Positions 3,184-47,814 are shown, numbered from the stretch's first letter. The stretch is DNA of 64,000 bases from Hyphochytrium catenoides (GCA_900088475.1 FLMG01001379.1:1-64000), one strand, 5' to 3'. Numbers and translations: made by a program. Notes: generated by a model not told the origin, from the sequence alone.

Positions 3184-4806
3184 ATGATCCATCCAGTGCG
3201 TCATCAACGGCATTATTCAGCCTTCTTGGGCATATTGCTCTGGAGCTACGCCGCACTTGCCCTAAACCAAGGCGTCACCTATGCAGAAGAGTTGGGCGAG
3301 GACATCCGAAGACTAGAACCAACTCGCTTCCGTAATGTGAAGATCCCTGCTACGAACAATGTCTTTCTTGATGGCAACGTGATCGAACCTCGCTTTGGTA
3401 CCAAGAACCCTGCAATTGTCTTTATCAGTAGCTGGGGACTTAACGACAAGGAGTACCTCGCCCAAGCCGCCAAGCTGGCAGATGACGGCTATACTGTTCT
3501 TTCATACACTGCAAGAGGCTTCTGGGGCTCTGGGGATGCAATCGACACAGGGGGCCCTCTAGACATCGCTGACGCTACCTCTGCCATTGACTGGCTTTTG
3601 AAGAACACCCAGGCAGATCCTGACCGCATTGGCTTTGCTGGGGTATCGTATGGTGCAGGAATCAGCCTTATCGCATCTGCTTTTGACAAGAGGATCAAGG
3701 CCGTAGCTGCCCTCAGTGGCTGGACCGACCTTGTTGAGTCTCTCTATGGAGAAGGAACTCGCAGACCTCAGGCGGCATTCCTTCTACAGGCCGTAGGAGC
3801 GGTGGTCGGGAAGCTAAGCCCAGGACTTCGGGAAACGCTGGATAACTACTTCGGCAACAAGAACGTCGACAAAGTTATTGCCTATGGTAAAGTTCGTTCT
3901 GCCGCGACCTACATCGACGCCATCAACCGCAACAAACCTGCCATCTTTCTCTCTAACTCCTTTGGGGACAGTCTCTTCCCGCCGAACCAGTTGGTGGAAT
4001 TTTTCCAGAAATATGACGGACCCAAGCGTCTGGAGTTCGCTCCTGGTGACCATATCGTGGTCGAAGCGACCGGGCTTATCGGTCTGCCAAATCAAGTATG
4101 GACCAATACTATCAGGTGGCTTGACCGCTATGTTGCTGGCAAGCTAAATGGCATTGAGAAGGAAGGCCCGATCTTTCTTCGAACGATCAGTGGAGAAAAG
4201 GCTGATTTTTATGCTACATGGGGCGACGTGGCCCCTTCCACTGCCCGCCTTGGACTTCAAGATATCAACCTGCTGACGGGTACTGGGAAAATGGGAGGCT
4301 CTCCAAGCAAGGGTTGGACGCAACAGATTCTGACAGGCATTGGCACAACCGCAGACGGTGGTGTTGCCCTTCTTACCAACGGCCTCGCAGCGCTTATCAA
4401 AGTCTATCCAATGCTCTGGCTGCCTTCTGTCGATAGACTCCGTGGCGCTGTGTGGGTGACTGACGAATTTAGTTCTGAACAGCGAATCAGAGGAATTAGC
4501 ACCCTCCACCTGACTATCCGGCCGTCCAAGCCAACTGGCACTATTGTCGCGTACATGCTCGATGTCGACAATGGAACAGGCAAATTGTTCAATTTCATCC
4601 CTTATTCCTGGAAGGGAGCTACTCCAGGCAAGGATCTCAGCATTGACGTTCGATTCTCTGCCACGGCGTATGACCTCCCTCGCGGCCGCCGCCTTGCACT
4701 TATTGTTGACTCAAAGGATTCCCTCTTCTCGGATGAGAATGGCTTTAATGACGCCATCATCATTGCTGGCGAGTCCTGGCTTGACCTCTCTCTCAACAAC
4801 AAGTAG
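3184..4806 (+). CDS. Secreted CocE/NonD-family (peptidase S15-like) alpha/beta hydrolase, intronless
   Basis: 540-aa single ORF with a hydrophobic N-terminal signal (SAFLGILLWSYAALA), GYTVLSYTARGFWGSG, nucleophile elbow RIGFAGVSYGAG, candidate catalytic Asp (GDSLF) and His (PGDH), and a C-terminal beta-rich domain with TAYDLPRGRRLALIV. Confidence 0.9.
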   Translation: MIHPVRHQRHYSAFLGILLWSYAALALNQGVTYAEELGEDIRRLEPTRFRNVKIPATNNVFLDGNVIEPRFGTKNPAIVFISSWGLNDKEYLAQAAKLADDGYTVLSYTARGFWGSGDAIDTGGPLDIADATSAIDWLLKNTQADPDRIGFAGVSYGAGISLIASAFDKRIKAVAALSGWTDLVESLYGEGTRRPQAAFLLQAVGAVVGKLSPGLRETLDNYFGNKNVDKVIAYGKVRSAATYIDAINRNKPAIFLSNSFGDSLFPPNQLVEFFQKYDGPKRLEFAPGDHIVVEATGLIGLPNQVWTNTIRWLDRYVAGKLNGIEKEGPIFLRTISGEKADFYATWGDVAPSTARLGLQDINLLTGTGKMGGSPSKGWTQQILTGIGTTADGGVALLTNGLAALIKVYPMLWLPSVDRLRGAVWVTDEFSSEQRIRGISTLHLTIRPSKPTGTIVAYMLDVDNGTGKLFNFIPYSWKGATPGKDLSIDVRFSATAYDLPRGRRLALIVDSKDSLFSDENGFNDAIIIAGESWLDLSLNNK

Positions 4807-30484: not shown

Positions 30485-32098
30485 ATGAGGCTCTACGCAA
30501 CAGGCATCCTAGCCGCGGTTCTCCTTTCTTTTCCTCAGGCGGAGTGCCAGGACTTTCCTCTGCGACTATTCGGTATTGGTGACTGGGGCAACACGCAACC
30601 GGAGACAGGAGCAGACAAAGATGCACAGCGGAGAGTGGCAGAAGCAATGGCAAAGTATGGAGCTTCGGTGCGCCCTGTCGCGGTGGCAACCCATGGGGAC
30701 AACTTTTACTGGGGCGGGCTGGCAAATCCTAACCATGAGAAGTTTCAAGAGGCGTTCGAGAACGTCTACACCGGAGATTCGTTGAAAGATGTTCCATTTC
30801 TGTTGACTTTAGGAAACCATGACATAGGAGGCAATGCCTACTTATGCGGCAAGGATCCGGGAACTAGTGCACAACACGACAAGTGGCATGTACCATGCAA
30901 CAGTAAGCAGGAAGCGATAGATGCAACACGCATGTATTACCAGGCATCTCAGAGCTACAGTTCTCAGAAGAAAGGCTCTGGAAGGCTTACCTTTGATGGA
31001 GCTTACTATATGCGGGCGTTTAAGGTGGGCTCGCTCAGTGTGGAAGTCTATATTGTGGATACCAATGTAGTCGATAGTGGACATATTTGCTGCCAGAAGG
31101 ACGGCTACGGACAATGTGCGGACCGCATGGGCGGTGTCCCTAGAGAAACCTTTGATGGGTGTATGGAAGTCTTACGACAATCCTTCAGCGAGAGCATGGC
31201 AAAACTCGGGCAGGATTTGGACAAGTCAACGGCAACTTGGAAGGTTGTGAGCACCCACTACTGTCCCACAAGACATATTGGAGGGCCCGAACTCCAGAGC
31301 ATTGTCAGCACGGTGAAGGACAGGGTACATGTATGGATGTGTGGGCACACCCACACAACGGTTCATGACTATATGAGCGTACCGAAACTGCACGTTCTCA
31401 TGAATGGTGCTGGAGGTGGGATTGTTCTTGATGGTCCTTCTTCTCTGGGGGAATCTGGCGAAGTCAGTACGGTCTGGGCCCCTCCTCGATCAGCCTATGC
31501 GTTCACGGATCTTCAGATGTCTGCAGAGTGGATGAAGATTAGCTTCGTCACCTATGACACGACTGTTACTGGGGGAAAAGAGGTAATGGCGTGCAGGGCC
31601 ATTCCGGTCAAACCAGGACCAGCAGTGGAATGCGACACCCTGCCGTCCCAAGCCCCCGCGGTCGAGCAGCCCCCCGTTGGTGACAAAGCTGCTAATCAGT
31701 CCTCAGAGGGCAGTGCCCAAGAGCCAGGCGGCACTCAAGGCGACTCTTCGCCTACGGCTTTGCTCTTGCCTACCACGACTTCTTCCTCAGTTGACAACGT
31801 AGTACAGCAGGGGAGTATCATTGGTAGTGACTCTGGTGATCCCACTGCTGTCAATGAGGCAGCCGCGTCGGGAGCGAGTCGGAACAGCACTACCGTGATG
31901 CTCTCAGTGGTAATGTCCTTAGCAGGTGTGGGAGCAATTGTGGTAGGCGCCGCGATGTGGTATAGACGACGACGGAACACTAGGTGGAGAGCTAGCGAGC
32001 TGCAAGAATCTATGGTCTACGATCCTAGGAGCAGAACGCCTAGAGAATCTTCAGTAGTGTTTGACTCGCGAAGAGGCACCACTCTACTGCGACTATAG
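30485..32098 (+). CDS. Calcineurin-like metallophosphoesterase (TRAP/purple acid phosphatase type), type I membrane protein, intronless
   Basis: Signal peptide; metal motifs GDWG, GDNFY, GNHD, STH and GHTH; Ser/Thr/Pro/Gly stalk; TM VMLSVVMSLAGVGAIVVGAAMWY followed by RRRR. Confidence 0.92.
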   Translation: MRLYATGILAAVLLSFPQAECQDFPLRLFGIGDWGNTQPETGADKDAQRRVAEAMAKYGASVRPVAVATHGDNFYWGGLANPNHEKFQEAFENVYTGDSLKDVPFLLTLGNHDIGGNAYLCGKDPGTSAQHDKWHVPCNSKQEAIDATRMYYQASQSYSSQKKGSGRLTFDGAYYMRAFKVGSLSVEVYIVDTNVVDSGHICCQKDGYGQCADRMGGVPRETFDGCMEVLRQSFSESMAKLGQDLDKSTATWKVVSTHYCPTRHIGGPELQSIVSTVKDRVHVWMCGHTHTTVHDYMSVPKLHVLMNGAGGGIVLDGPSSLGESGEVSTVWAPPRSAYAFTDLQMSAEWMKISFVTYDTTVTGGKEVMACRAIPVKPGPAVECDTLPSQAPAVEQPPVGDKAANQSSEGSAQEPGGTQGDSSPTALLLPTTTSSSVDNVVQQGSIIGSDSGDPTAVNEAAASGASRNSTTVMLSVVMSLAGVGAIVVGAAMWYRRRRNTRWRASELQESMVYDPRSRTPRESSVVFDSRRGTTLLRL

Positions 32099-33430: not shown

Positions 33431-34576
33431 ATGGTAGAGACAAGGCATAACCCAGTAGCTCCGGAGCTTGGATCTCTCCGGACGGTGGACATGTTCACTG
33501 CCATACAGATTAGGGGCTTGACCATCCGGAACCGGATCATGTTGAGCCCAATGTGCATGTACCATTGTGAAAACAAGGACGGAGTTGCATCTGACTTCCA
33601 CGTCATGCACTACGGAACAAGGGCGCTGGGAGGGACTGGCATTGTATGCGTAGAGGCAACCGCAGTGGAACCAAAGGGCCGAATTTCTCCTCAAGATCTA
33701 GGGATTTGGGGTGACGAGCATGTAGAGCCTCTTAAGCGGGTCACTAGCATTATCAAGGAGAATGGCGCTGTCCCAGCCATTCAGCTAGCTCATGCAGGAA
33801 GAAAAGCAGCAACTTATAGGCCCTGGGGCGTAGGTACTAAGAGAGGGGCTATTCCTGAGGACGAGAGCTGGGAACTTGATGCTCCAAGTTCTATCGCATG
33901 GGGCACGCACTATCCTACCCCTCGTGAGCTAACTGTGGACGAGATCAAGGAGAAGGTCAATCTCTTCAAGCAAGCTGCAGAGAGAGCCCTAGCCGCCGGG
34001 TTCCAGATTATTGAGATTCATGGGGCCCACGGCTATCTCATCCACGAGTTCCTTTCGCCTGTCACCAACAAGCGGACGGACAGCTATGGCGGGAGCTTCG
34101 AGAATCGTATAAGCTTTCTCTTGGAAGTCGTGGATGCCGTTAGGAGTGTATGGCCCGAAGATCTTCCTGTGTTCCTCCGTATTTCAGCTGATGATTGGCA
34201 TGAGAGTGGCTGGACGCCAGAAGACTCTGCTCGTCTAGCCCAAGTGGTAAGGGAACACGGCGTGGACCTTGTCGATTGCTCCGCAGGAGCTATCTCAAAC
34301 GACGTCAAGTACCCAGCATCTCTCGGTCAGCAAGGCTATCAAATTTACCTCGCTGAGAAGGTGAAGAAGGAAGGCGGCGGTGTGCTTTCAGGCGCCGTAG
34401 GAGGCATCAAGGAGCCTGCATTTGCCGACAGCATTATAAAGGAGGGTAAAGCTGACATCGTGATTATTGGGCGGCAAATGCTTGCAGACCCATTCTGGCC
34501 TAATCATGCAGCTGTGGAGCTGAAGCAGAGAGAGCGGTTAGACTATGCCCCAGTCTACAGATGGGCGATCAAGTAA
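33431..34576 (+). CDS. NADH:flavin oxidoreductase / Old Yellow Enzyme, YqjM (NamA)-like, intronless
   Basis: RNRIMLSPMCMY, EATAVEPKGRISPQDLGIW, IQLAHAGRKA, EIHGAHGYLIHEFLSPVTNKRTDSYGGSFENR, GRQMLADPFWP. Confidence 0.95.
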   Translation: MVETRHNPVAPELGSLRTVDMFTAIQIRGLTIRNRIMLSPMCMYHCENKDGVASDFHVMHYGTRALGGTGIVCVEATAVEPKGRISPQDLGIWGDEHVEPLKRVTSIIKENGAVPAIQLAHAGRKAATYRPWGVGTKRGAIPEDESWELDAPSSIAWGTHYPTPRELTVDEIKEKVNLFKQAAERALAAGFQIIEIHGAHGYLIHEFLSPVTNKRTDSYGGSFENRISFLLEVVDAVRSVWPEDLPVFLRISADDWHESGWTPEDSARLAQVVREHGVDLVDCSAGAISNDVKYPASLGQQGYQIYLAEKVKKEGGGVLSGAVGGIKEPAFADSIIKEGKADIVIIGRQMLADPFWPNHAAVELKQRERLDYAPVYRWAIK

Positions 34577-35661
34577 GGGAGATGGTGGGAAGGAGACAGA
34601 AGGAATATACTATTTAAAGCTTTTAACTCAACCTCTAATTAACACACATATTTGAAAGGATTGCTCTGTATGAAGTCTGTCAAATGCACCTTGTACAGAG
34701 TCGGGAGCGCCATCCATCATATCTTCAAAGGATGAGGTGCTGCATCTAGTGCCGTGAGCAGGTATCCAATGTGAAGAAGAAGCCATGACGGGAGGGGTTT
34801 GAGGGACAAACAGACTGCCGTTGGCTCCATCTACCAGGATGGGTCTCGTCCAAAGCGGCACTGCGACGACAGATCATAATCTCCAGAGATCCATCATCCA
34901 TCACCTCCAACATGCATGAACTTTGGCTGAAATGTTTCCATCGTCGGGACCTAGCTGTACACAGTGAAGAGGGCTTGAAAGAATGAGATGATACTTTCTT
35001 GATGAAAGCTTCATGGCCAGTCTAACCTTCATTCACATCATCGAAAGGACACGCACGGCCACGCCATCATTAGAGACCTAGCAGGCCAGCAGATAAGGAG
35101 CGCTTCCGTACGAGAACATGCAAGCAATGTCACACCGATAGGAGAGAAGCTGAACCGCCAGTGAGAAGTCGAGAGCAGACCCGATGGATGAGAGATAGAA
35201 ATAGTCAGGATGTTAAGAGCTTGATAGCTGCAGCTACACTCAGTCAACGTCAAGTAAGTCACAGCAGATACTGCTGGAAATGGTGACTATGGCCCCAGAT
35301 GACACCATTGTACTAGAGCAACACTAGACGAACAAAGGCGATGAGGCTAGGTTTGGGTCATCCTACTATCGGAGGACTAAGTTGACCTTCCGGGAGCGGG
35401 AAAGCGCCAGCCTCGCGGCCAGAGGGTCCCTACGAGGAGAGTAAAAGCCAGACCCCCAATAAAGATGACAGTAGCACAAGTTCTCCTCTTCCTACTATCG
35501 ATTCAGACTTATGGAAAGTTTACGGTGGCAACCCGTGCAGGTGACGATATGCTGCTTCCTTGACTGACCCGATGCAGGCCTTTAACCATAACCCGCTCAT
35601 GCACCCCTGCGCCTATAACTTGACACTCCTGCTGTCTACCCTCGGTGTCTGCGACTCCCAG

Positions 35662-38600
35662 CTTGGTTGGAGGCTTCCGATAACTGTACGCAAGCCTGCT
35701 TTCAATATTGTGCTTGTCCATTGGGCATAAATAAGGTGCAGAGCTTACACACAATAGCTGCTGCATGATAGCGTGTTGATGGGTTTGAATGACGCTCTTC
35801 CAGGTACCTTGTAGCGGGAATGGGAACTGTATCGAGGGTGTCTGCCAGTGCTTCGGTGGATTTGAATCGTCTGATCCTACTCAAGCAAACTGCGATGTTT
35901 GTAAGTGGAAGGAGTGTGCCAGTTCCCTCTGCCAACCTGGATCTTCAGACATCAAGTGCTACCTGATCCGCTTCTGTCCCTCCTTGCCTAAGTCTTATAA
36001 GGTTGATTGTCTTTTCCCTCCTCGCCTGTCAATCCAGTAGTCTAGTAGCTTCTCTCCTTTGATGCAGTAGCTCTCCTCAGCTAAGCCTCCCTAGACCCTG
36101 GTATGTTAAGTTAACAGCACTTTCTTAACATCTGCAGTGGTTCTTGGCATAAGCAGCTACCCGTACCTCATAGCTACCACTGCAGCAGCCATCACTCTCA
36201 TCATTACCATCCCGTCCTCGCTCATGGTTTTCCTACTGCGGCGGAAGAAGTCAATCATTGAGATGAGGCCAATTCTTTCCCAGCTGATCAATGGTGGCGT
36301 GGTTCTAGGAATGAGCGCTCTTCTATATGCCCTGAATAATGAATCTTCCAACGCGGATTGTGCTGCCATCTGGGCCGTACTGGACTACTCCTTCGTCATT
36401 ACGTATGGGACGCTTCTCCTCAAGGTACACCGCATCTCATTCTACGATGTGCGGGACACACTCAGGTTTGGCGCTTAGTGGCATGTCTTGTGGTTGCAGA
36501 TGTTGAGTATCTCTCGGACTGTGACATCCAAGAACTCCATTGCATTGGACGACCGATGGGTTATGAAGGGCCTACTAGCCCTCCTCCTCATCAACACAGC
36601 TGTACTTGGTATTGTGTATGGTAAAATGACCCTCGTCTATCTCAGAACTCATCCCTTGATCGCCTGACTACTTCTTCCTCCTTTTCCGATATGGAAAAGG
36701 GGTTCAGGGCGTGGACACTTTCAGTGACAGTCAGACAGCGAGTCAGCTTAGCCGGGAGGAGGGAATCACTGCTATGGTAAGGAACCTTGGTCAGCGGTAA
36801 CTAGATGGCTTAAGCATTCATGTCTTTGGAAATACGCCAAGAACTTTCAGTCCTGTTGCCCGACTTGGGTTGGGGCTCTAGTCTGTGCCAGTCGCCCAGT
36901 TCTATCTCTTGACAACTGAGAGTAGAACCTTGAAGTTTTATAGCACGTCTTCTCCACAATTGCCTGACTTTCTCGGACCGCCACAGGGCCCGGACCAGTC
37001 TGATGAATATTTAATCTTGCTGTGCTTCTGATTGGTACAGACATATCGCGGCTGTGTCTTGAGAGACTATGGCCTCATTCTCTCCATAATCATAACTAAG
37101 GCCCTCCTTGTCCTTGGAACTTTCATCATCAGCTTCAGGTCCAGAAGGGCCCCGGAGCCCCATGGAGGTATGCAGATTGTTATTGGGATATTCATATTCC
37201 GGCCGTTATTGTCTCGCCTTACATTCCCCATTCTTACCTCTCTCTTCCAGCGGAGAGTCGGGCCATTCTCTTCGCCATCTTCACTTCGGGTTGCGGTTGG
37301 GGTGTGGCCGGGCTACTCCTACTTCCCAATCTTCAGGTCCCTGGCGTAAATTATCAGTATATGTGTGTCTCCATAGGCATGGCGCTTTCCTTCGTAAGTA
37401 TTCACTACTAACTGGTCGTTCCCTACTTTCGGCTAGTCAATGGTTGTAACATCTCACTTTACTGCTCAATATCCTTAACATGGTCTCATCGCCGACCATC
37501 CCTCTCTCACTGAACTGCTCTCGTGTCCAGAGTATCTGTGTTCTATCTTCGGTGGGTCCTGCAATGCGTAACCATTTCTATAGCAGCCGCTCACGGTTTC
37601 TGGTAAGTGGCTTGTCCTCGATAACACTAAGCCTTCACCCCCAGGATCCTCATTATGCTCACCAATATCACCCCATTGCCTCTCTGTGGCTTATTGCCCA
37701 CAGATTGCTCCAGTCCATTTTTTGAGCCTATCAGCTAAAGGAGACGGGCTTAATGTGCAGGACCCTGGCAGCGTTAATGACCTGCTTATAAAGACCGACT
37801 GGTCAGGTAAGTTGAGGAACAATGTGGCCGATAGAGCGACAAAGGAACTTCATCCACACCCTCATTCGGCGGGGCAGAGCGCAGCGTGCATCCCATCTAA
37901 AGTAGGGCGAGAAAAGAAGGCTGGTTACCAGGCAGATAACAGGGAACATAAGACATTGACAGTCTTTCCTTAGACTTCAATAAGGTGGAAAGACTACACC
38001 AGCAGTTGGAGACATTGGGCTACCCGCTCACATCGTTGCCAGAGCTTCTTCTTTTCCTCCTGTCCGGGGACATCAAGATAAATAAAATGAGAGCCTATGC
38101 GGTGCGCTGTCTAAAGGTATTCGGCCCTTGCAGCCTTTCATCGTGTTGCCATGGCAGAAGATCCTTCGTCCTCCACTGTCTTTATCTGATCTTGGGCTCC
38201 CTCATGGTCCGTAATCAATGTCACGCTTAACTGTGTACTCTTTGTTCTCAAGCTTGCGCGATTTATCTCAGCTTTCCACTCGTGAATCTCTTCTTGGCAT
38301 TCTTGGTCGCCCTGCACCGAATGATGTACTCCATGGGCCTCAGTTTGCACCTGCCTTCAGGAGCTGGACAGCACAGACCTGGAGTTCCTACTCCCACAAT
38401 TGGTACAGGCTCTACGTTATGAGCCCCAGCTCAATGATCCTTCTTGTGGCCATTCTGAAACCCGGCATGCCTGCGAGGATGAGAGCCCGCTTGCATCCTT
38501 TTTAATAGCAAGAGCGATAGAAGAGGAGGTGTTCGGCACTGCTTTCCATTGGCAACTAGAAGTAGAGCTTCATGCCGAGATGTTGGTTACCTACAATGTG

Positions 38601-41600
38601 GTACGAGGCAGGAAGAGACTTGTAGAGATGTCGGTCTCCTTTTTCTTCGTCCTATATAGGCTCCTTCGGCTCCCTTTTCCCTTCTTGTTTCAGGCCTGCC
38701 TAGGCTAATATGCATACGAGGAGTCAACGGATTCCGTAGATAGAACCAACACAGCCTGTCCTTCGACTGTTGCTAAGCTAAGCCTGGTTGGCGCCGTAGG
38801 ACGGATTTCTTAAGAAGGTGTCCAGACCGAGTGATGTCATTTACATCTACAAAGGGTAAGTTGACCTGCTGAGGCGAGAGAACGAAGGCAAAATGAGAGA
38901 GCAGCCGGTTCTGAGCAATGGCTGTCGACGGCCATATCCAGGACCAATGCTCGCACTCTTATACCCATATGATTGCCAGGGTTCAAGAAGTATTCATGCG
39001 AGAGCTGAAGGCAAAAAACCCCGAGCTGCTGCAAAAGATTCAAAACCAGCGCAACTTCATGGCCAGGATTCATGAGGCGTGGAACGAGGCTGATGAGGAG
39101 GGAGGGAGCGCCTCCCAGAAGACAACCTATCTGCAAAAGAGTCTGGAAGCAGGGTAAGGATTGGCTAGTAGATTGCCCTCTGAAGTAAAAGAAGGTGGTC
39201 ATCTGGTAAAGTCCATCAATGACCGTAAGAGAAGACAGAGAGGACGGAGAAGAGCGAGGAGGAGTTAAGATAAATGGAAGTAGAGTAGTACGGGGTGAAG
39301 AAACACGTAGTCTCAGGAAGCGCAGGGTTGAAGACATTCAGAAGCAAGGCTAATAGCTTTTTTCTTACGCAAGCGGGAAGTACGAAGACCTTGCACTTCT
39401 GTCACCTGGCACTACCCACCCACTTTACCCTCAAGTGATAGTCAAAGGACTAGATCCTCGTGGCTGCTTTTTTCTGAAGAGCAAGACACGACCCCTTTTG
39501 GTTGACTTTGTCATAGACAAGGAGGCTATGATCAAGCGTGAAGAGGAAAGGATAAGGACCAAGGAAATGGTGGGCTACCTCCTCTCGGTCTCCATGACAG
39601 ACCGCTCCATACTGCAGTGTGTGATACCCCTGTCTCCTAAGCCCTATCACAGACTGCTCCTATTTATTGACTGTTGCCCTGGTAGATCTAGAGTTTAACT
39701 TAGAGCTCTCGACTTTGCAGGAAGAGTTCTACTCTGAAGACGATCAGGTACCCCAAGGAACTAAAAAGATTGCCAGCTACATTCAAAATGGGACCCTTAC
39801 GTCCTACACTTCGCTCATCATTTGGCTAATCCTTTCACCCATGCGCGCCTGTCTGTAGGTCAACGCTAAGAAGTACCGCATCAAAATAAAGAACCTGAAA
39901 GCAGAGCAACTCCTGAACTTTGACTCCAGCAGCCTAAGTGACCCTTTCATCTGTGTCGAGTGTCTAGGCAGAATAAAGGCCACAGAGTAAGACCTCTTGC
40001 GACACGGTCTTTCGCACGCTTAATATTCTTCTATAGACTTCCCTGAGCTTCAAGGCTTTCCTTTTTTCTTGGTTATCTCCTCTGAGCATACGTTGAGTAG
40101 GCTCTGACAGTTGTCTCTTACTTACGTATTAGGACTGTCATGGACTCTCTCTCTCCCCACTGGAAGGAAGAACTAGTTTTCACCGTCGGGCTGCGTCCCG
40201 ATGTCCTGCTCTTCTCCTTGTTTGATGATGATGACTTTGGCAGTGAGAAGAAGGGTGATCATAAACGAAAGAAAGACTTTCTTGGAGAGAATAGTGTTCT
40301 CATTGAGGATGGCTGGTGGTCTATGAGGTTAGTCCTTCCCTAGTTTGCCCCGTTCTCTTTGTGCTCAGATGTGTACGTGTTGCAAGGCATTTTCTGTGGG
40401 CTTGGCAATGCTACTTTGATCTCTGGAGCCGCTGTTCTTCATTAGTGACTCTTATCAAGTCTCTGGTCTTGCAGCAATGCGCTGATCTAAGCTTCTGACG
40501 TGAACAGTCCCGAAGACCAAGAACGCACAGAAAGGACCCTAGAGCTTGAATTGGAGAGAGTGAGGAGAGGAGGAGGTGGAACGGAGAAAATTAAGAGTGG
40601 CAAAGTACACTTTAGTATAATCTGCGAGGAACTCGCGCCTCATTCCCCACAACCGCCATCCTCGTCTCTTCCGCCTGTTCCCGGTGCAGTCGCTCATAAG
40701 TTCACTCCCATCGCACCTAGTGCCCTGGAGAGCAACTACAGAGAAAGAGCGAGACAAGCAGTTGAAGGATTTCTCTCGTCACACTCCTGCCGGCTAATTT
40801 ACAAAGCAGGGGACAATCTTCGCCAAGACGTACTGGCGCTACAACTGATGGGACACTTTGATTTTGTTCTGAAGCAGAGGGGCTTTGACTCGAAGATCAC
40901 AAAGTACGGTTGTCTACCACTAGAGCCCACCCGGGTAAGCTCTTGTCCTCTTTGTTTCTAAACTCTCTAGTGTTTTAGCTGAGCTATAGGTCCTGCCAAT
41001 ATTTGCCTACGGGGTGCTGCCTCTCCTGGTTTCATCGACATTTCCATTATTCTGTCTCCTATACCTTGCAGCAGCCGTTGCCGTGTCCGTCTTGTTGGTC
41101 ATCTTACTCTCATTAAATACTAACCACTCCGCTTAACTGTATCGATTGCTGGGTGTCACATGTCTCGGATCTCCTCAGGGTTTCATTGAAGTTGTCGACG
41201 CTATCCCCATCAGCAGAGCCCTGAGTGATTATAGCTCGCTCTCCTCCTTCCTCAAGAGCAAAGCTGGCGATATAGTCATGCCCAATGGTCTCGTTTCTGA
41301 ACCAGCTTTTCATTTGCATGCCTCGTCTCCCCTTCCAGCTTCGCCGTGAATACTCTCTCCACTGCGCTACGAACTTGATGTTAACACTTAGTGTATCTGG
41401 CCTTCTGTCTAGAAGAATATGCTGCCCCATTCAGCATTCTTCCATGGCCATTAATAGCGTTCGCCATTGCGATCTTTACCTCTCATTCTTCTCGTAGGCA
41501 TTCAGAAGGATATCTACAGCAACTACGTGCATTCCCTTGCGTCTGCCTGTGTACTTTCCTTCGTGCTGGGGGTGGGAGATCGCCATCTGGACAACATCAT

Positions 41601-42347
41601 GATAAGCCCTTGTGGGAAAGTGTTGCATATAGACTTTGGATTTCTCTTTGGGAATGATCCGAAACCATCTCCCCCTCCATTCCGTCTCACACCTGAGATG
41701 GTGGCCGTTCTGGGAGGTCCAAGAAGTAAGGTGAGAGTATAAAACGACGAGGTCACGAAAGTAGGACTTAGAGGAGAATACGCTATGGTGCCAGATAGCG
41801 CAGGGCAACTAAGCGCTAGCAGACGCAAGGGGGGTGGGCCACTAAGCAAGCAGGGCCAGTGAACTGACAGTTTCCCGCTCCTGTGGGTTATCCTCTGCTG
41901 CCAGGAGTTCAAGTTCTTCATACGCCTTTGTCAAGACATCTACATCACCATACGCGGATCACCATCCCTCTATCTGATGATGGTCAATCTTATGAGAGAT
42001 GCAGGCATACCTGACCTACAAGAAAAGCCAGATAGAGTTCTTGCGGAGGTGAGTAAGTCTCTGACATGGCTCATGCCCAATCCTCTCTATCTTTCGGTCC
42101 GTGTAGATGTAAGTAGCTCTCAGTTTTTGAATGTCTGCTCTCGAGCCGAAGGATAAGCGATGTATGAATCTATCATAACCGAGCTTCTCGCTTAATTCAG
42201 CTCCGCGCCAGATTGCTGCTTGGCAAGGACGATAAGAGGGCCCAAAAGTTTATGAAGCGGTTGGTACTGGAGAGTCAACAGCTCAGTACAGCTGTCCGGC
42301 TTAGCGTACAAGAGCTCCTTCACAAGTTTGCCGTCACTTTGTCATAA
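35662..42347 (+). CDS. EGF-like + class C GPCR-like 7TM + Vps34-like PI3-kinase fusion with inserted C2 domain, multi-exon; 5' end undefined
   Basis: Exons give CPLGINK|VPCSGNGNCIEGVCQCFGGF (EGF). 7TM motifs: DCAAIWAVLDYSFVITYGTLLLK, ESRAILFAIF, SVGPAMR. PIK helical domain: MRAYAVRCL, LPQLVQALRYE, LASFLIARA, FHWQLEVE. Kinase: HPLYPQVIVKGLDPRGCFFLKSKTRP, IYKAGDNLRQD, GVGDRHLDN, HIDFGFLFGNDPKP, EMVAVLGG. Stop at 42345-42347. Confidence 0.85.
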
Positions 42348-42514
42348 ATTTGTTCACACTGAACGGAAAGACGAGTAGGTGGCTACGGGGTGCCTTTAAA
42401 GTAACGAGCTTCTTGTCCAATTGGCAAAGGCGCCGCTTAGTTCTCTATGCATTTAGCAGGGCTGTAGAAAGGCAGTCGTGAAGGAAGTCTTCACAGATAA
42501 CGTCCTTAAGATGT

Positions 42515-45500
42515 CTATAGCCACTGCATTGCTTTGAAGGAGTAGTGAGTACTAAAACAGAAAGACATCGCCAGGAGCCACCAATACAGGTAGCCGTATC
42601 GCTCCCGTAGCTCCGGCATAATATCGAAGTTCATCCCATACACACCAGTCAAGAACTGCGCTGGCAAGAAAACAGCAAACACAATGATTGCAATCTTCAT
42701 CCTCTTCTCAATGCGTGCCTCCTATATTCAGATCAATGTGCAAAGCGGACAAGAGAGTGAGTTTGGTCACTGCATCTGATCGTCGCTAGTAAGATGCATT
42801 CACCCTACCTGCATCTTGTAGAAAGCATAGGTTAATTTACGGCATTGAGAGATAAAAGTGTCCACAAGTTCAACGGCCTGAGAGGAAAGCGATTAGTCAA
42901 GACCAAACCGCTTCCAAAAGAAACGCCGTCTGCACTGCAATTAGCAAGGACATCAGCAGCAGTGGAGGGTACAAAGGTGAATCGACGGGAAAGCCTTGGA
43001 GTGAACAAAGGTGACGAAAACTAAGAGCCATAGGTTATTGGGTAAAGAACATCAAACAAGGATCGCCAAAAGTGCTGGTAGAGATAAGAGGCGCATACAT
43101 CGCTGGCATCATCTCTCGTATCTCTTAAGTAGAAGACAGTGTTGGTATCTATGGCAGATGCTGCGATGAACTGATTGATGACATCAAGGTAGGGAAAGAG
43201 AATGCGACGAAGCTTGGCCAGTTGACCGCTGTGACAGAAGATGCATTAGTGACACTTTCCATGTATTGTAGATGCCATCTGGCGCAGTAAGCATCTCCAT
43301 TCCCACAATGACATTCTAGAGTAACCTTTGAGCGAGATTCGCTGCTTACCTAAGCCTATGTATTCGCGAAATCTGGAATTGGTGGCGTTCAATGTTCATC
43401 TCGTGCTCAAGTATCTCAAGCTGCGTCTGAAAGGCCTCGACAACTGCCTATCATAAGCAGGAAGGAAGAGCAGCGCTTAGTGAACTCTTTCGCAAGCGCT
43501 ATGATGTGTTGAGAAGGTGGCCCAGCGAGGTGACCATGCAGATATTGAGAGGCTAGGTGACAGTAGGCTAATGTATAAGGAATTTAGGAATTAGGCGCGC
43601 AAGGTGACAAATAGTCACCACACAGAGCCAAGACCGGCGACTTTTGGGAGAGCCTGGTGAGACTCAAGGAAGAGGGTTGCTAAGTTAGAATCAGGTCAGG
43701 AGACTCACCTTTGCCTCTCTAACCAGTTGATTTAGTATCTCATACGTTAGGAAGACTGCTCCTCCTGTCCTAAGCCGCGAAAGGCGATGGTTCATCTTCG
43801 CCACAATACCGCTCCACAAATGAGGAGGGCATTGGTCTAATATGGTCAACACTGTGCAGTCTTCGACTACCAGGATGTTGACCTATGCCACAATGCTAGT
43901 TAATGCAGAGTATCCGAATGAAGGGCAATTTGATATCATTCACTCACGACCAGGAATCACGACGAAGGACCATAGGTTGAAAGCCATTCATTGCAATGAA
44001 TATGAGGGTAACATGAAACGGCAAGACCATCACACTTTGAGGTTATCTATGGATGTAATCAGGAACAGTGACACGGACATCTAATAACTCAGTCACGAGG
44101 AGGGAAAGGGGAAGAAAGAAGGGGATGTGGTATCTTCATCTTAAAACCCACCTGACCAAGCTTCAATTGCGTAAGATCGTCCATTGCAGGAATTGAGGGG
44201 GCAATTGAGGAGAGACTGTTTCCCTCGCTGTTCATAGAAAGGCGCTCCTCCAACTCTTCTAAAGCCTGATCTTTACGTTTGAGCTCCCTTATCGTTAATG
44301 CCTCCTCCACCTCCTCACTTTCTCCAAGAAGATGCAGCTGTTCCTCGGGGCCTCCAACCGATCTCCTCGACGCTGAGCTGCAACAACACGTTAAGCTCTA
44401 TTCAGCAGAGCTGATGAGAAGAAGGCACTACAAAGAAGGCTCTATTCTCCCACCGTAACCAAGCCTTGCTCTGTAAGCGCATAAGACGGCGTATAGCGTC
44501 GTTCCACTGCCCCGACCGTCTACCTCCTTGGACCTTAGGACTGCCAGCTAAGGTTCCGTATCTAAGGAGGAATTGGTGAGTAACGGTATCAGACAGATAT
44601 GGAGCCTGAAGCAAAAGGAAGCTTCGTCATTGCAAAGTTTATAGTTTGCCTCTACCTGGAAGTATGCCGATGAAGGGCTTGGGGAGACGAGATATTGTGA
44701 GGACTGCTGCCAGTGCTGGAGACTCCTAGTGCGGCGCCTCTCTTGTCCGGTCCGGAGATATTGTTGAATTTCGTGGTGGTCCAGCCGTACCATATTCTAG
44801 ATGGTTTGGCCAGCAGGTTTCCCCCATCAATCTCATCATGATGGAAGGAGCCGTCATCTTCGTCTCCGTCTTCGACGTTCCCCTGCCCTAGTTGAACGAC
44901 CGGTAGCACAATAAACAAATGATGCTCGTGCTGCTCAATCTTCGGTCGTTGACCTAGGTGAGGAAGCAACAGAAGTCAATACGTATCGAAGATTACAAAT
45001 AAGCACATAACGAGCACAAGAGCCTTCAGCTAACAGAGAAAGAGGGAGGAGGGGAAGACATTTTTTTGCGCAAGCAGACAGCTAGGTTCCTGATGGACGG
45101 TTATTAGTAACACTAACCAAAGTGAAGAATGTCTTCAACTGCCAGGGGATGCAGCCTGTGCTTCACTGCTAGCCGCTTAAGAGCCAACTCGTTAACTCCA
45201 CGTAGATTGACCCACCGAACAGTTGCCCAGGGGGGTAGGTTTGAATAGGTAAACCCTTCGAAGTCCTTGACGTGAAACAGAGAGCGCACCCTAAAAGAAA
45301 ATGTTAAATCGCTGTCAAGAGGAGAATGTTATCGAATAGGCCCTCAACGAAATGCAGAGGACAACCACTAGCAGGCAGCTAAAAAAAGCATTCAGGAGTG
45401 CGCATCTGTTCTACAACATACAGTCTAGCCACGTGAAAATGACCAATTCAGCTTACCTTGATGGAGAATAGTCATGGACATCGAGTTCAACCGTGTCCTT

Positions 45501-47814
45501 TCTGAATGCTGAACCCTCAATAGATCTAACAGTGCTCGGGGAAAAGAGGTCTGCTAGCTTTATACGGAGTACCATAGATTCGAACTCTTCAAAGGTGACC
45601 CCGCCACTGTGGTCGCTATCCACCTATAGATGGGACCTTGAGCGGAGACTGGACTATCTATCCCTCTAATAGCGTTATTGTAGACCAAAAGAACGTTACT
45701 AGAGTAAGCAGAGGAACAAAAAAGAAGAGTCAAGATAAACCACGTCAGGGTGTTTTTAGGTACCCGTTTGAGCAAAGCCCTGAATGACGCTTGGTCCTCG
45801 CACCAGATGCCCAGTTGCTTGAGCCCCTCGTAGAAATCGTCGTAGGAGACCAATCCATCGGCTAATGCAGGGCACAACAGCCATGAATGGTAGGGGAAAG
45901 TTAGAAGACTACCAACCGGGCAGTGGAACGAAGCAAGTTTGTATGCTGGAACTTGAGGGGAGGCAAGACTTAACATTTTCAAGAATCTTACCGTTCAGAT
46001 CAAGTTTGGAAAACAATCTCTGAAGTAGACTTCTGGTAGTGTCGAAGTAGCTGGAGGGAACAGATCAGCGAGGTGTCGTCAATTCATATGCCAACAAATG
46101 CGTACACTACTGGCCACAGCATCTTATCAGCTTGTAACATTCATCTTGAGCTATTATAGAAGCGTGCGCCCTTTCCAGCATGGAACTTACGGGTCTAGAA
46201 GTGAGAGGTCATCACTTATCTCTCGGTGTCTCTCTCCGTCGTCAAATGAGTGACGACGCCTGCTCAGTGGAGAAGCAATGACATTAAAGCCCTGCAGATC
46301 CACATCGCGAGTTTTGATGGAAGGAAATGTCTTTGGGCGAAGTGGGGTGGATCCTAAAGCGAGGGAGATTGAATAAAGTCAGAGTTAGCCCGCATGCCAA
46401 GCCTAAAAAGCGCCGAGCCCAATCAGGGGCAGATGAAGACAAGGCATAGAGAGGGCTAAATGGAATATACAGAGGGAGAAGATGGACGGAAGACACTCTC
46501 GTTCTCCTACCTCTTTCCTCCTTCCCAGAGTTTCGTTCATACTGAGCCAAAGTTTTCTTGGCCGATTCAAGAAAATAGGCTGTAGCGTTGTCAACATCCT
46601 GCGAACTCTTTCCTTCTTCATTCGTGGATGACTCGTCTGCAAAGAACGAGCTCTTTGATCTTTTCTCTCGATTAAGATCAAGATTCAAGCAGCTTAGATC
46701 GATTTTCTCCATCTTTCCCGAGCGCATCTTAGGTGTGCCATGGCCACGATTGCACAGGCTAGGAGCATACCTTTGTTCCTCTGGAGGCAAAACTGACTCC
46801 TGTTCAGAACGTGAGGTACTTTTATTGTCAGTGATGAATTCCAAGCACCCTAAAGAGGTAGCCAGCGGCGGAGAGCAAAAAGGCAGGATGAAGTACTAGT
46901 AATAACGGGACGAGCGACGGCAAGTAGAACCCAGCTAGTGGTATGGGTTTAGAAGTAATCCTAACTCGAGCTCTTACCTCCTCCTCCTGTCCCGGCTTTT
47001 GATTGCTTCCCCAGAGCCAGTTTGTCATGCGATCCCCGATTGACCCAGTGCGATAAAATGTGTAGGATTGTCTCTTGACTAGCAAAGGAGTGGTCTCGTA
47101 CGAGTCTTTCGCCTGGATATGTTCAATTGCATCCTCTCCGTCCTTGGCGTCTGCTCTTGAGGCTCTTCTTCCAAAAGCCAGCTGCGTGACGGCTGGATTG
47201 CTAACAAAATCTCCATCGTTTTCTCCTTGTCTAAATTTATGCTCTGGCAGAACCGCAGTGGTGGTAATGTTCTGGTTGGCCTCTGGTCTTGAGCTCCGTC
47301 TGCCGAAAGGTAGCTGGGCAACCGCGGGGTTGATGGAGGTCTGTACATCTAGATCGCCTTGCTTGTCGGGACCAGTGACAACGTGAGACGCTCCGTCACT
47401 ATGCTGAGAGCCAACTTTAGCCTCGGGCCGGGACCTCCTCCTGGAGAAGGGAAGTTGAGCGACGGCTGGACTGATAGCCTTCTGACCGCTGCTCTCCCTC
47501 TGCCTCTCGGGTGGTGGCCCTACCGCAATAAGTCCACTTGGCTTGTGGTTACTTGTCTGCCCTGACTCTTCAGGGCGAGATCTGGATCGTGTAAAAGGGA
47601 TTTGCGCTACTGCTGGGCTTATGTTACGGGAGCGCTGCTCTCCAGAAAGACTATTACCTTCTTCAAAATTTCCTTCCAGGTCTTTTGAGCGGACATGCTT
47701 CTTGGCCTCAGCCGTCGGTGAGCTTGAGGAGGAACCAGGATGGGACCCTTGTCTGACGGGATCTGTGCTCAGTGGGAACTGGGGTGCTTCCCGAGATGAA
47801 CTATTGCTTTCCAT
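42515..47814 (-). CDS. CorA-family Mg2+ transporter with N-terminal repeats and an EF-hand pair, multi-exon
   Basis: VRWVNLRGVN, HRLHPLAVEDILH, QRPKIEQHEHHLFIVL, and C-terminal FLPAQFLTGVYGMNFDIMPEL...GYLYWW (GMN signature). EF loops are DLNADGLVSYDD and DSDHSGGVTFEE. Confidence 0.9.

What the first reader, a model, noticed from the sequence alone, without database searches (positions are those of the whole stretch)
35662..42347. One-component receptor lipid kinase: class C GPCR-like 7TM fused to a Vps34-type PI3-kinase
Seen: an EGF-like exon pair, then seven hydrophobic segments with class C GPCR hallmarks (C..W...SF..TYG.LLLK in TM3, ES+AI.FAIF at TM6, GP after TM7). After TM7 (...GPAMRNHFYSSRSRFL) a phase-0 gtaagt...cacag intron (37603-37703) joins in frame to IAPVHFLSLSAKGDG...LLIKTDWSD. 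That runs into the PIK helical domain and a kinase with intact catalytic motifs (K..D.LRQD, DRHLDN, DFG, DPKP.PPP), closest in pattern to class III Vps34. The N-terminal C2 by which Vps34 normally joins its complexes is absent at that position and replaced by the receptor. Known: GPCRs fused to PIP5K-fold PIP kinases exist in Dictyostelium (RpkA) and oomycetes, but that is a different kinase fold. Inference: an extracellular/lumenal ligand could directly switch on PI3P production, bypassing G proteins and the Vps15/Beclin complex. I do not know of a characterised example but cannot rule out prior annotation.
Basis: partly seen in the sequence, partly recalled or inferred. Interest (0 to 1): 0.95.

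Follow-up and report, generated by a model that had tools for sequence, protein, structure and literature searches.

The report
Receptor fused to Vps34-type lipid kinase
This is one real 23-exon gene that joins a class C GPCR-type seven-helix receptor to a Vps34-derived lipid kinase carrying an inserted C2 domain. It belongs to a small, uncharacterised family that also sits unnoticed in water-mould (Saprolegniales) genomes.

Summary
A 23-exon, all GT-AG, stop-free model (35465-42347, + strand, 1133 aa) encodes these parts in order:
- a signal peptide
- an 8-Cys EGF-like module
- seven TM helices of class C type
- a short linker
- a truncated PIK helical domain
- a Vps34-type kinase with intact catalytic motifs

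The fusion is not a splicing artefact. The model aligns end to end (E 1.8e-142) with relatives in which the same architecture is a single uninterrupted ORF. These relatives are a metagenome protein (P0016) and proteins of Saprolegnia, Achlya, Thraustotheca and Aphanomyces.

In those relatives Pfam 7tm_3 scores 58-97 bits (cut-off 33.5). An AlphaFold model of the 7TM part hits only class C GPCRs in the PDB. The kinases form a 100/100 clade inside Vps34, away from class I.

Exon 1 carries the signal peptide. A genuine C2 domain is inserted in the kinase N-lobe, while the N-terminal Vps34 C2 is indeed absent.

The family is already in public databases as 'hypothetical protein' or 'phosphatidylinositol 3-kinase'. 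I found no paper describing it, and it is not among the published GPCR-bigram types. Ligand control and independence from Vps15/Beclin remain inference.

Verdict: a new variant of a known kind, of solid interest.

The parts
35465..35540 (+). Exon 1: ATG and hydrophobic signal peptide (MTVAQVLLFLLSI..). Ends in phase 1.
   Evidence: donor CAG|gtgacg, and the phase matches exon 2. Relatives also start with a signal-peptide-like segment. The assignment is inferred, with no RNA evidence.
35662..35735 (+). Exon 2: first half of the Cys-rich EGF-like ectodomain (..DNCTQACFQYCACPLGINK).
   Evidence: The Cys pattern C-x3-C-x3-C-x-CP-x-G-x-N is conserved across the family.
35804..35900 (+). Exon 3: second half of the EGF-like module.
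   Evidence: Pfam EGF_2 23.2 bits (cut-off 22.1) and EGF_Teneurin 19.5 bits. Aligns with the relatives.
36138..36424 (+). Exon 4: TM1, TM2 and TM3. Includes the TM3 Cys and Trp and the ..GTLLLK end of TM3.
   Evidence: Pfam 7tm_3 27.1 bits, profile positions 7-93 of 251. Hydropathy. 40% identical to P0001.
36500..36620 (+). Exon 5: intracellular loop 2 and TM4.
36700..36776 (+). Exon 6: first part of extracellular loop 2.
37041..37167 (+). Exon 7: the extracellular loop 2 Cys (..YRGCVL..), which is the partner of the TM3 Cys, plus TM5.
   Evidence: The G-C pair is invariant in the relatives.
37251..37393 (+). Exon 8: the acidic residue at the start of TM6 (AESRAILF), the TM6 Trp, and the first part of TM7.
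   Evidence: The TM6 Trp is invariant in the family.
37531..37602 (+). Exon 9: end of TM7 (..SSVGPAM..) and the membrane-proximal tail.
37603..37703 (+). Intron 9 (101 nt, phase 0): the junction between the receptor half and the kinase half.
   Evidence: This is the only in-frame pairing that combines a consensus donor (gtaagt) with a pyrimidine-rich acceptor (..tattgcccacag). Reading through unspliced gives a stop at 37723-37725.
37704..37806 (+). Exon 10: variable linker and then the conserved (I/V)N..L..V.W.D motif that opens the retained part of the helical domain. It has no Met.
   Evidence: The motif aligns with the relatives, where it lies 20-60 residues after TM7 in the same ORF.
37974..38116 (+). 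Exon 11: PIK helical domain.
38361..38600 (+). Exon 12: PIK helical domain core (..LLPQLVQALRYE..).
   Evidence: Pfam PI3Ka 48.1 bits, profile positions 104-159 of 185.
38800..38855 (+). Exon 13: helical domain.
   Evidence: Aligns with P0016 and P0001.
38980..39153 (+). Exon 14: end of the helical domain.
39374..39569 (+). Exon 15: start of the kinase N-lobe (HPLYPQV..., and FLKSKTRPLLVDF, the P-loop-like stretch), then the start of the insert.
39721..39747 (+). Exon 16: a 27-nt micro-exon (9 aa, acidic). This is the least certain exon. Skipping it keeps the frame.
   Evidence: It lies in a region that varies among relatives.
39859..39986 (+). Exon 17: first half of the inserted C2 domain, including loop 1 (D-x5-DPF).
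   Evidence: Pfam C2 12.6 bits, profile positions 2-30. Weak matches to synaptotagmin-7 C2A.
40133..40327 (+). Exon 18: second half of the inserted C2 domain (..LSPHWKEELVF.., acidic loop 3 DDDD).
   Evidence: Pfam C2 22.2 bits (cut-off 22), profile positions 42-84. Matches NEDD4 and Munc13 C2. The equivalent insert of P0016 folds as a C2 domain.
40508..40934 (+). Exon 19: last C2 strand, a low-complexity linker, then the return to the kinase N-lobe with the ATP-binding Lys motif IYKAGDNLRQD.
   Evidence: Pfam PI3_PI4_kinase 29 bits..
41179..41292 (+). Exon 20: kinase hinge region (GFIEVV..). It has a weak donor (CTC|gtttct).
   Evidence: The intron before it (40935-41178) is at the same position as the only intron of the L001 relative.
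41497..41730 (+). Exon 21: catalytic loop GVGDRHLDN, HIDFG, and the Vps34-type activation loop GNDPKPSPPPFRL.
   Evidence: Pfam PI3_PI4_kinase 85.7 bits. PDB search: Vps34 89 bits, p110gamma 55 bits, PI4K 47 bits.
41905..42048 (+). Exon 22: kinase C-lobe helices.
42201..42347 (+). Exon 23: C-terminal helices, including the Vps34-like last helix (..LLHKFAVTLS), and stop TAA at 42345-42347.

Best explanation
**Shown.** One gene (35465-42347, + strand) encodes a 1133-aa membrane protein. The order of parts is:
- signal peptide
- a small 8-Cys EGF-like ectodomain
- a class C GPCR-type seven-helix bundle
- a tether of about 40 residues
- a PIK helical domain lacking its first part
- a Vps34-derived kinase whose N-lobe hairpin (between ..LLVDF and ..RLIYK) carries an inserted C2 domain

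An N-terminus outside plus seven helices puts the kinase in the cytosol. The catalytic Lys, the DRH..N loop, DFG and the Vps34-type activation loop are all intact. The architecture is conserved in Saprolegniales oomycetes and in two unnamed environmental eukaryotes.

**Inferred.** The protein is a self-targeting PI 3-kinase that makes PI3P on the cytosolic face of whichever membrane holds the receptor. The 7TM anchor and the inserted C2 domain would take over the membrane targeting that Vps15, Beclin/Vps30 and Atg14/Vps38 give canonical Vps34. In the window copy the C2 keeps the acidic loop residues typical of Ca2+-dependent C2 domains. Canonical Vps34's hub for those partners, the N-terminal C2, is missing here. 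The state of the receptor half (ligand on the EGF-like or 7TM part, or dimerisation as in class C receptors) would tune kinase access to the membrane. This would make it a one-component sensor and effector, as proposed for GPCR-PIPKs.
For: **Gene model.** 23 exons, all GT-AG, consistent phases, no stop.

**Fusion is real.**
- The model aligns in one HSP over residues 33-1132 with P0016 residues 2-1046 (E 1.8e-142), and full length with P0007, P0004 and P0005.
- P0016 is one intronless ORF on two independent assemblies, L003 and L004. P0001 is one ORF plus one 47-nt intron.
- The exon right after the junction carries a family-conserved motif and has no Met. The first in-frame Met after TM7 lies inside the helical domain.

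**Class C receptor.**
- 7tm_3 scores 58-97 bits in relatives against a cut-off of 33.5.
- The AlphaFold model of P0016 1-345 has pLDDT 76.7, and its top 50 PDB hits are all class C GPCRs.
- The TM3/ECL2 Cys pair, the basic residue at the end of TM3, the acidic residue before TM6 and the TM6 Trp are conserved across the family and the window.

**Vps34 origin.** (89 vs 55 vs 47 bits). In the careful tree the fusion clade has 100/100 support and lies inside Vps34, against a class I outgroup at 100/100.

**C2 insert.**
- Pfam C2 hits on two collinear exons.
- The insert is 160-260 residues in all members, against 66-75 in canonical oomycete Vps34.
- The AlphaFold model of the insert hits only C2 domains, with TM-scores up to 0.77.
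- Acidic loop residues align with synaptotagmin-7 and NEDD4 C2.

**No N-terminal PI3K_C2.** PF00792 is never reported for fusion members but is reported for canonical Vps34.

**Role of the Vps34 C2.** Its role as the hub of complexes I and II is established knowledge (yeast complex II structure, Rostislavleva et al. 2015), recalled and not tested here.
Against: - There is no transcript, protein or activity data for any member, so splicing across 37602/37704 is inferred.
- The window copy is very divergent: end branch 2.65 against a median of 0.36, and 29% identity to its nearest relative. Part of that could be gene-model error, or relaxed constraint.
- On its own the window's 7TM reaches only 27 bits on 7tm_3 (one exon) and finds nothing in the PDB by sequence.
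- The Lys of the class C PK.Y-type motif after TM7 is conserved in relatives but is Ala in the window.
- There is no Venus-flytrap ligand domain, so no ligand can be guessed.
- Vps15 also contacts the helical and kinase domains of Vps34, so independence from Vps15 is not established.
- The Ca2+-ligand residues of the C2 are not conserved in the relatives. Ca2+ control, if real, may be specific to this lineage.
Confidence: 0.6

Rival explanations
1. Anchor only. The seven-helix domain has lost any sensing role and simply fixes a constitutively active Vps34 paralogue to one organelle or the plasma membrane. The EGF-like module serves sorting or adhesion.
For: There is no recognisable ligand-binding domain beyond about 55 Cys-rich residues. 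The window copy has lost the Lys after TM7. The 7TM part evolves fast: 29-40% identity between lineages.
Against: Positions that matter for class C conformational switching, rather than for mere membrane insertion, are conserved across lineages. These are the TM3-ECL2 disulfide pair, the basic/acidic pair at the cytosolic ends of TM3 and TM6, and the TM6 Trp. The eight ectodomain cysteines are also conserved.
Confidence: 0.2
2. Conventional wiring. The receptor half still signals through heterotrimeric G proteins, and the kinase half still needs Vps15-type partners. The fusion only co-localises two steps of a normal pathway.
For: The published GPCR-bigram models include this option (PMC6033456). 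The fold is closest to G-protein-coupled class C receptors. The helical and kinase surfaces that Vps15 touches in canonical complexes are largely retained.
Against: The N-terminal Vps34 C2, which holds the canonical complexes together, is absent in all members, and the start of the helical domain is gone. Nothing here tests G-protein coupling either way.
Confidence: 0.1
3. Two products. The locus yields a 7TM-only protein, through read-through or another acceptor giving a stop just after 37602, and a separate truncated kinase. The in-frame junction would be coincidental.
For: Unspliced read-through stops at 37723-37725. Donor 37603 with the acceptor ending at 37644/37645 shifts the frame into an early stop. 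No RNA data are available.
Against: - That alternative intron would be 43 nt or less, while the 22 introns of the gene are 68-264 nt.
- The kinase half has no start codon before the middle of its helical domain.
- The same order of domains is one uninterrupted ORF in intron-poor relatives.
- The collinear alignment runs through the junction.
Confidence: 0.04
4. A decaying or catalytically inactive copy. The long branch would reflect a pseudogene, or a pseudokinase that only scaffolds.
For: The end branch is 2.65, seven times the median. GDDLRQD is changed to GDNLRQD. One donor is weak (gtttct) and one micro-exon is doubtful.
Against: 3.4 kb of coding sequence spread over 23 exons has no stop or frame break. 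All splice sites are canonical. The catalytic Lys, DRHLDN, DFG and the activation loop are intact, and the catalytic exon is 68% identical to P0016.
Confidence: 0.06

Closest known systems
Uncharacterised oomycete proteins with Pfam 7tm_3 + PI3Ka + PI3_PI4_kinase. Examples: Achlya hypogyna ACHHYP_06618, Thraustotheca clavata THRCLA_04504, Saprolegnia diclina VS20 and S. parasitica SPRG_04299, and entries from Aphanomyces invadans, astaci, euteiches and stellatus. Also metagenome proteins P0016 and P0001.
   Same: The domain order is the same from signal peptide to C-terminal helix, including the C2-type insert at the same N-lobe hairpin. The proteins align collinearly over their full length. 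The kinase clade has 100/100 support. The convergent CorA neighbour is shared with P0016 and P0001, and one intron position is shared with P0001.
   Different: The window copy is the most divergent member (29% identity) and is sister to all the others (96/80). It has 22 introns against 0-1. Its C2 insert looks more canonical, with a Pfam hit at the cut-off and acidic loops. The Lys after TM7 is lost. The window's organism is unknown and is not in the searched collections.
GPCR-PIPKs (Dictyostelium RpkA; oomycete GK/GPCR-PIPK D1-D12) and the other published GPCR-bigrams (INPP, AC, PDE, TKL, AP). Sources: van den Hoogen et al. [quoted passage not shown]
   Same: An N-terminal seven-helix receptor domain and a C-terminal catalytic signalling domain in one polypeptide, here again a phosphoinositide kinase. 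The overlap in lineage is with oomycetes. The open question is the same: direct coupling or G proteins.
   Different: - The kinase fold and product differ: a PI3K/PI4K-family, Vps34-derived kinase, rather than a PIPK-fold kinase making PI(4,5)P2.
- The receptor class differs: 7tm_3 (class C).
- The LR(x)9GI linker motif of GPCR-PIPKs is not seen in the linker read.
- PI3K is not among the published types. Those were mined from Phytophthora infestans, which shows no member in my searches.
Canonical class III PI3K (Vps34 / PIK3C3).
   Same: It is the closest solved relative of the catalytic exon (89 bits). The catalytic and activation-loop motifs are the same, the C-terminal helix is similar, and the core of the helical domain is retained. 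The fusion clade lies inside Vps34 in the tree.
   Different: - There is no N-terminal PI3K_C2 domain.
- The first part of the helical domain is missing.
- A 160-260 residue C2-containing insert sits in the N-lobe.
- The protein is membrane-integral rather than recruited through Vps15/Beclin complexes.
Class C GPCRs without a Venus-flytrap domain (GPR156, GPR158/179, GPRC5 group).
   Same: A class C seven-helix fold with a short or non-VFT ectodomain. GPR156 and GPR158 are among the structural hits.
   Different: These receptors carry no enzymatic C-terminal domain. GPR158 signals through a bound RGS7-Gbeta5 complex rather than a fused enzyme. Sequence identity is only 14-20%.

Membership tests
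Class C GPCR seven-helix domain (Pfam 7tm_3) | Seven transmembrane helices with the N-terminus outside | tested here: met
   Seven hydrophobic segments follow a signal peptide in the spliced product. There are seven helices plus an ECL2 hairpin in the AlphaFold model of relative P0016.
Class C GPCR seven-helix domain (Pfam 7tm_3) | Score at or above Pfam's gathering cut-off (33.5 bits) | tested here: inconclusive
   In the window only single exons could be scanned. Exon 4 gives 27.1 bits over profile positions 7-93, and the other TM exons give nothing alone. Relatives that align collinearly with the window protein score 58.3-96.7 bits over the whole profile.
Class C GPCR seven-helix domain (Pfam 7tm_3) | Fold closest to solved class C receptors | tested here: met
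   Tested on relative P0016, not on the window protein. The top 50 Foldseek hits are all class C (GABA-B, mGlu, CaSR, GPR156, GPR158), with E down to 2.9e-9 and TM-scores of 0.58-0.65 on the query.
Class C GPCR seven-helix domain (Pfam 7tm_3) | TM3-ECL2 disulfide cysteines, a basic residue at the end of TM3, an acidic residue before TM6, and the TM6 Trp. These hallmarks are recalled from the literature. | tested here: met
   All are present in the window and conserved in the family alignments. The Lys of the P-K motif after TM7 is conserved in relatives but is Ala in the window.
Class C GPCR seven-helix domain (Pfam 7tm_3) | Venus-flytrap (ANF_receptor) ligand domain and coupling to G proteins | tested here: not met
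   No ANF_receptor hit appears in any member. The ectodomain is only an EGF-like module of about 55 residues. G-protein coupling cannot be tested with these tools. Some accepted class C receptors also lack the flytrap.
Class III PI3K (Vps34) | PI3K/PI4K catalytic domain with the ATP-binding Lys, the DRH..N catalytic loop and DFG | tested here: met
   Pfam PI3_PI4_kinase 85.7 and 29 bits. The motifs were read directly.
Class III PI3K (Vps34) | Kinase closer to Vps34 than to class I/II PI3K or PI4K | tested here: met
   89 bits against Vps34, 55 against p110gamma, 47 against PI4KA and 45 against PI3K-C2alpha. The tree gives 100/100 against the class I outgroup. No PI4K or class II sequences were included in the tree.
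Class III PI3K (Vps34) | N-terminal PI3K-type C2 domain (PF00792) | tested here: not met
   It is absent from the window model and from all fusion members. Precomputed Pfam lists PF00792 for canonical Vps34 but never for the fusion family.
Class III PI3K (Vps34) | Complete PIK helical domain | tested here: inconclusive
   PI3Ka hits start at profile position 45-104 of 185. The alignment with Lagenidium Vps34 shows the first helices replaced by the linker.
Class III PI3K (Vps34) | Works within Vps15/Beclin complexes, and the product is PI3P only | not testable with these tools
   The activation loop is of Vps34 type, which suggests PI as substrate. Partners and product need biochemistry.
GPCR-bigram (receptor with a fused catalytic domain) | 7TM receptor domain and catalytic domain in one polypeptide | tested here: met
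GPCR-bigram (receptor with a fused catalytic domain) | Belongs to one of the six published types (PIPK, INPP, AC, PDE, TKL, AP) | tested here: not met
   The catalytic domain is PI3_PI4_kinase. The two defining papers do not mention a PI3K type.
C2 domain (PF00168) as the N-lobe insert | Eight-stranded C2 beta-sandwich | tested here: met
   Window exons: C2 22.2 bits (cut-off 22) and 12.6 bits, collinear on the profile. The model of the P0016 insert has a core pLDDT of 80-91, and its top 50 PDB hits are all C2 domains, with TM-scores up to 0.77 on the target.

The most novel reading that the evidence does not exclude
A true one-component lipid-signalling receptor. An extracellular cue acting on the EGF-like or 7TM part, together with Ca2+ acting on the inserted C2, directly gates a Vps34-type kinase. 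PI3P would then be made on demand at the cell surface or at a specialised compartment, without G proteins and without the Vps15/Beclin machinery. This would be a second, independent invention of the receptor-lipid-kinase principle, and a natural example of Vps34 working outside its universal complexes.
Probability: 0.25. Interest if true: 0.85.

Novelty: new variant of a known kind. Interest (0 to 1): 0.62.

Why it matters
Vps34 is the one PI 3-kinase found in all eukaryotes. In every studied case it works only inside Vps15-containing complexes that decide where PI3P is made.

Here evolution has removed the domain that docks Vps34 into those complexes. It has bolted the catalytic core onto a class C receptor and added a membrane-binding C2 domain. 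The result offers three things:
- a natural test of what the catalytic core needs in order to work on a membrane
- a new type of receptor-enzyme fusion alongside the GPCR-PIPKs
- a lineage-restricted signalling protein in Saprolegnia and Aphanomyces, which are pathogens of fish, crayfish and legumes

The family is already deposited for those genomes, so experiments can start from existing strains and sequences.

Tried and rejected
- **Sequence search of the PDB with the 7TM exon:** no hit at all. Class C membership therefore rests on Pfam and on the fold of relatives.
- **Exhaustive HMMER search with the 95-aa 7TM exon:** only two hits. Both were fusions, but sensitivity was low and only one job was allowed, so no profile search of that library could follow.
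- **Two scans of JGI metagenome contigs**, one with the family N-terminal alignment and one with the window exon: nothing was confirmed. One call failed on a busy server.
- **Looking for the window's own genome through its intronless OYE protein:** not on record. No near-identical hit to exon 4 was found either. It is an intron-rich eukaryote, grouped with oomycete-type sequences by the kinase tree and the CorA neighbour.
- **Placement of the fusion clade inside stramenopile Vps34:** this had 98% SH-aLRT support in the quick tree but collapsed to a polytomy in the careful tree. I claim only 'inside Vps34'.
- **P0074, the non-fusion protein most similar to the window kinase:** checked for hidden TM segments and has none. 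Among 127 fetched PI3K-like proteins, only fusion members have four or more hydrophobic segments.
- **Paralogues in the window:** none.
- **First literature search:** wasted by a loose setting.
- **Later literature searches** for 7tm_3 with PI3_PI4_kinase, GPCR-PI3K with oomycete, Vps34 with GPCR domain, and Saprolegnia with PI3K: none returned a relevant paper.
- **Limits on the window protein:** the spliced protein could not be handed to Pfam, structure prediction or the large protein searches as one sequence, because no reference exists for a spliced product. Relatives served as proxies.

Full report
**What is in the sequence.**

Reading 35000-43000 on the + strand, I built a 23-exon model and checked it by script. 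It runs from the ATG at 35465 to TAA at 42345-42347. All 22 introns are GT-AG and 68-264 nt long, the phases agree throughout, and the 3402-nt coding sequence has no stop.

Next comes a module of about 55 residues with eight cysteines (exons 2-3). Seven hydrophobic segments follow (exons 4-9).

After a 101-nt phase-0 intron (37603-37703), the product continues into a PIK helical domain and a PI3K/PI4K-type kinase.

Pfam on single exons:
- 7tm_3: 27.1 bits for exon 4 alone
- EGF_2: 23.2 bits
- PI3Ka: 48.1 bits
- PI3_PI4_kinase: 85.7 and 29 bits
- C2: 22.2 and 12.6 bits on two consecutive exons (39859-39986 and 40133-40327), matching successive parts of the C2 profile

**Is the fusion real?**

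No RNA data can be consulted, so I looked for relatives. An exhaustive HMMER search with the 95-aa TM1-TM3 exon found only two proteins, both about 1000 aa long. Pfam finds 7tm_3 (89.5 and 59.1 bits, cut-off 33.5), PI3Ka and PI3_PI4_kinase in both.

Searches seeded with them gave a family:
- Saprolegnia diclina and S. parasitica
- Achlya hypogyna
- Thraustotheca clavata
- Aphanomyces invadans, A. astaci, A. euteiches and A. stellatus
- two proteins from environmental assemblies, P0016 and P0001

P0016 is a single uninterrupted 1047-codon ORF on two independent contigs. P0001 is one ORF plus a single 47-nt intron.

The window's spliced product aligns with P0016 in one HSP, residues 33-1132 against 2-1046 (E 1.8e-142). 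It also aligns full length with three Saprolegniales members.

The multiple alignment with exon ends marked supports nearly every exon. This includes exon 10, which directly follows the junction. Exon 10 carries a motif conserved across the family, (I/V)N..L..V.W.D, and has no Met. The first in-frame Met after TM7 lies in the middle of the helical domain.

Enumerating all GT/AG pairs around the junction gives 19 in-frame solutions, all of them fusions. Only 37603/37703 combines a consensus donor with a pyrimidine-rich acceptor. I therefore take the fusion as established at the level genomics allows.

**What the receptor half is.**

In full-length relatives, 7tm_3 covers the whole profile at 58-97 bits. 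An AlphaFold model of P0016 residues 1-345 used a 12-row family alignment and reached pLDDT 76.7 and pTM 0.72. It shows a small beta-rich ectodomain, seven helices and a beta-hairpin in extracellular loop 2. Its best 50 PDB matches are all class C receptors: GABA-B, mGlu, CaSR, GPR156 and GPR158.

Several residues that I recall as class C hallmarks are conserved in the window and the family:
- the TM3/ECL2 cysteine pair
- the basic residue ending TM3
- the acidic residue before TM6
- the TM6 Trp

The Lys after TM7 is kept in relatives but is Ala in the window. There is no Venus-flytrap domain. By itself the window's 7TM is not demonstrably 7tm_3: one exon scores below the cut-off and the PDB sequence search finds nothing. 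Its membership rests on collinear homology with proteins that pass.

**What the kinase half is.**

The catalytic exon scores 89 bits against human, fly and yeast Vps34. It scores 55 against p110gamma, 47 against PI4KA and 45 against PI3K-C2alpha.

A careful IQ-TREE analysis of helical plus kinase columns (37 rows, 504 columns) gives three results:
- The ten fusion kinases form one clade with 100/100 support.
- That clade lies inside Vps34, against a class I outgroup at 100/100.
- The window is sister to all other members (96/80).

The position within Vps34 is unresolved. The quick tree's stramenopile placement did not survive. The window row has a very long end branch (2.65).

The catalytic Lys, DRHLDN, DFG and the Vps34-type activation loop are intact. 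GDDLRQD reads GDNLRQD.

The N-terminal PI3K C2 domain (PF00792) is absent from all fusion members but present in canonical Vps34 hits. The PI3Ka match begins only at profile positions 45-104 of 185, so the first helices of the helical domain are missing.

The window has 239 residues between the P-loop-like stretch (FLKSKTRPLLVDF) and the lysine strand (RLIYKAGDNLRQD). Relatives have 160-260 there, and canonical oomycete Vps34 has 66-75.

In the window this insert gives the C2 Pfam hits. In P0016 and P0001 it gives sub-threshold C2 hits. An AlphaFold model of the P0016 insert (core pLDDT 80-91) matches only C2 domains in the PDB: dysferlin, Munc13, otoferlin, E-Syt and cPLA2, with TM-scores up to 0.77 on the target.

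The window's two C2 exons also find synaptotagmin-7, NEDD4 and Munc13 C2 domains weakly. Their acidic loop residues (D-x5-DPF, and a DDDD run) line up with the Ca2+-binding loops of those domains. Those acidic residues are not kept in the relatives.

So the family has lost the Vps34-type C2 at the N-terminus and gained a generic membrane-type C2 inside the kinase N-lobe.

**How it most likely works.**

- Shown: the topology puts the kinase in the cytosol on a tether of about 40 residues, and the catalytic apparatus looks functional.
- Established knowledge, not tested here: canonical Vps34 is held in its complexes mainly through its N-terminal C2, and it reaches membranes through its partners.
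- Inferred: this protein is a self-targeting Vps34. The 7TM anchor and the C2 insert replace the adaptors. It makes PI3P where the receptor resides. The conserved class C switch residues and the conserved ectodomain cysteines argue that the receptor half still changes state and modulates the kinase.

The rivals are listed with their tests in the rival explanations: anchor only, conventional G-protein or Vps15 wiring, separate products, or a decaying copy.

**Comparison with what is known.**

The concept of a GPCR fused to a phosphoinositide kinase is known from RpkA and the oomycete GPCR-PIPKs. 'GPCR-bigrams' with INPP, AC, PDE, TKL and AP domains have been described (PMC5784254, PMC6033456). 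Those were mined from Phytophthora infestans, and neither paper mentions a PI3K type.

My searches found no Peronosporales member. Full-text searches for the domain pair, for GPCR-PI3K in oomycetes, and for Vps34 with a GPCR domain returned nothing relevant.

The proteins themselves are in NCBI and UniProt as 'hypothetical protein', 'Phosphatidylinositol 3-kinase' or 'PIK helical domain-containing protein'. So the architecture is deposited but, as far as I can see, undescribed.

I rate it a new variant of a known kind. It has a different kinase fold, a different receptor class and an unusual internal C2.

**Context and limits.**

The gene is followed by a convergent CorA-type gene (about 42515-45860, minus strand). 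The P0016 and P0001 loci have the same arrangement. The window's intron 19 shares its position with the only intron of the P0001 gene. These links tie the window to the same gene lineage despite 29% identity.

The source organism is not in the searched collections and remains unnamed. Its intron density is unlike sequenced oomycetes (recalled from general knowledge, not tested here).

The window protein could only be analysed exon by exon or through relatives. All functional statements are inference.

Noticed in passing
window 42515-45860, minus strand: A multi-exon CorA-type Mg2+ transporter gene lies convergent to the fusion gene, with the 3' ends about 170 bp apart. Its last exon carries the GMN motif. 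The same gene pair in the same orientation follows the fusion gene in the environmental loci L001, L003 and L004, but not in Thraustotheca (L002).
   Followed up: partly
window 40935-41178 (intron 19); L001 about 6341-6387: The only intron of the L001 relative is 47 nt long (GTAAGC..TTAG). It sits at exactly the same codon boundary as window intron 19: after ..PT(K/R) and before GF.E(F/V)V. This is a shared and presumably old intron position in an otherwise intron-poor relative.
   Followed up: partly
window 3184-4806, 30485-32098, 33431-34576 (all + strand): Three long intronless ORFs have clear enzyme domains: Peptidase_S15/PepX_C, Metallophos, and an Oxidored_FMN old-yellow-enzyme at 277 bits. 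They lie in the same window as a gene with 22 introns. The contrast in gene structure could mean recently acquired genes, possibly of bacterial origin, or simply single-exon genes.
   Followed up: no
window 5759-6349, + strand: An ORF fragment has a strong Catalase hit (184 bits, two stretches). It is probably one exon of a split catalase gene.
   Followed up: no
P0088 (Lagenidium) and P0103 (Plasmopara) canonical Vps34: Canonical oomycete Vps34 proteins already have 66-75 residues at the N-lobe hairpin where the fusion family carries its 160-260-residue C2 insert. By my recollection, animal Vps34 has under 20 there. The site seems to tolerate insertions in this lineage.
   Followed up: partly
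L001 (Logan SRR27418475); L003 (Logan ERR4674102) and L004 (ENA ERZ23491423): The two environmental relatives come from compact, AT-rich (39-41% GC), almost intron-free eukaryotic contigs. The gene order ZW10 - fusion gene - CorA - Rad9 - protein kinase is conserved between them. Their organisms are unnamed.
   Followed up: no
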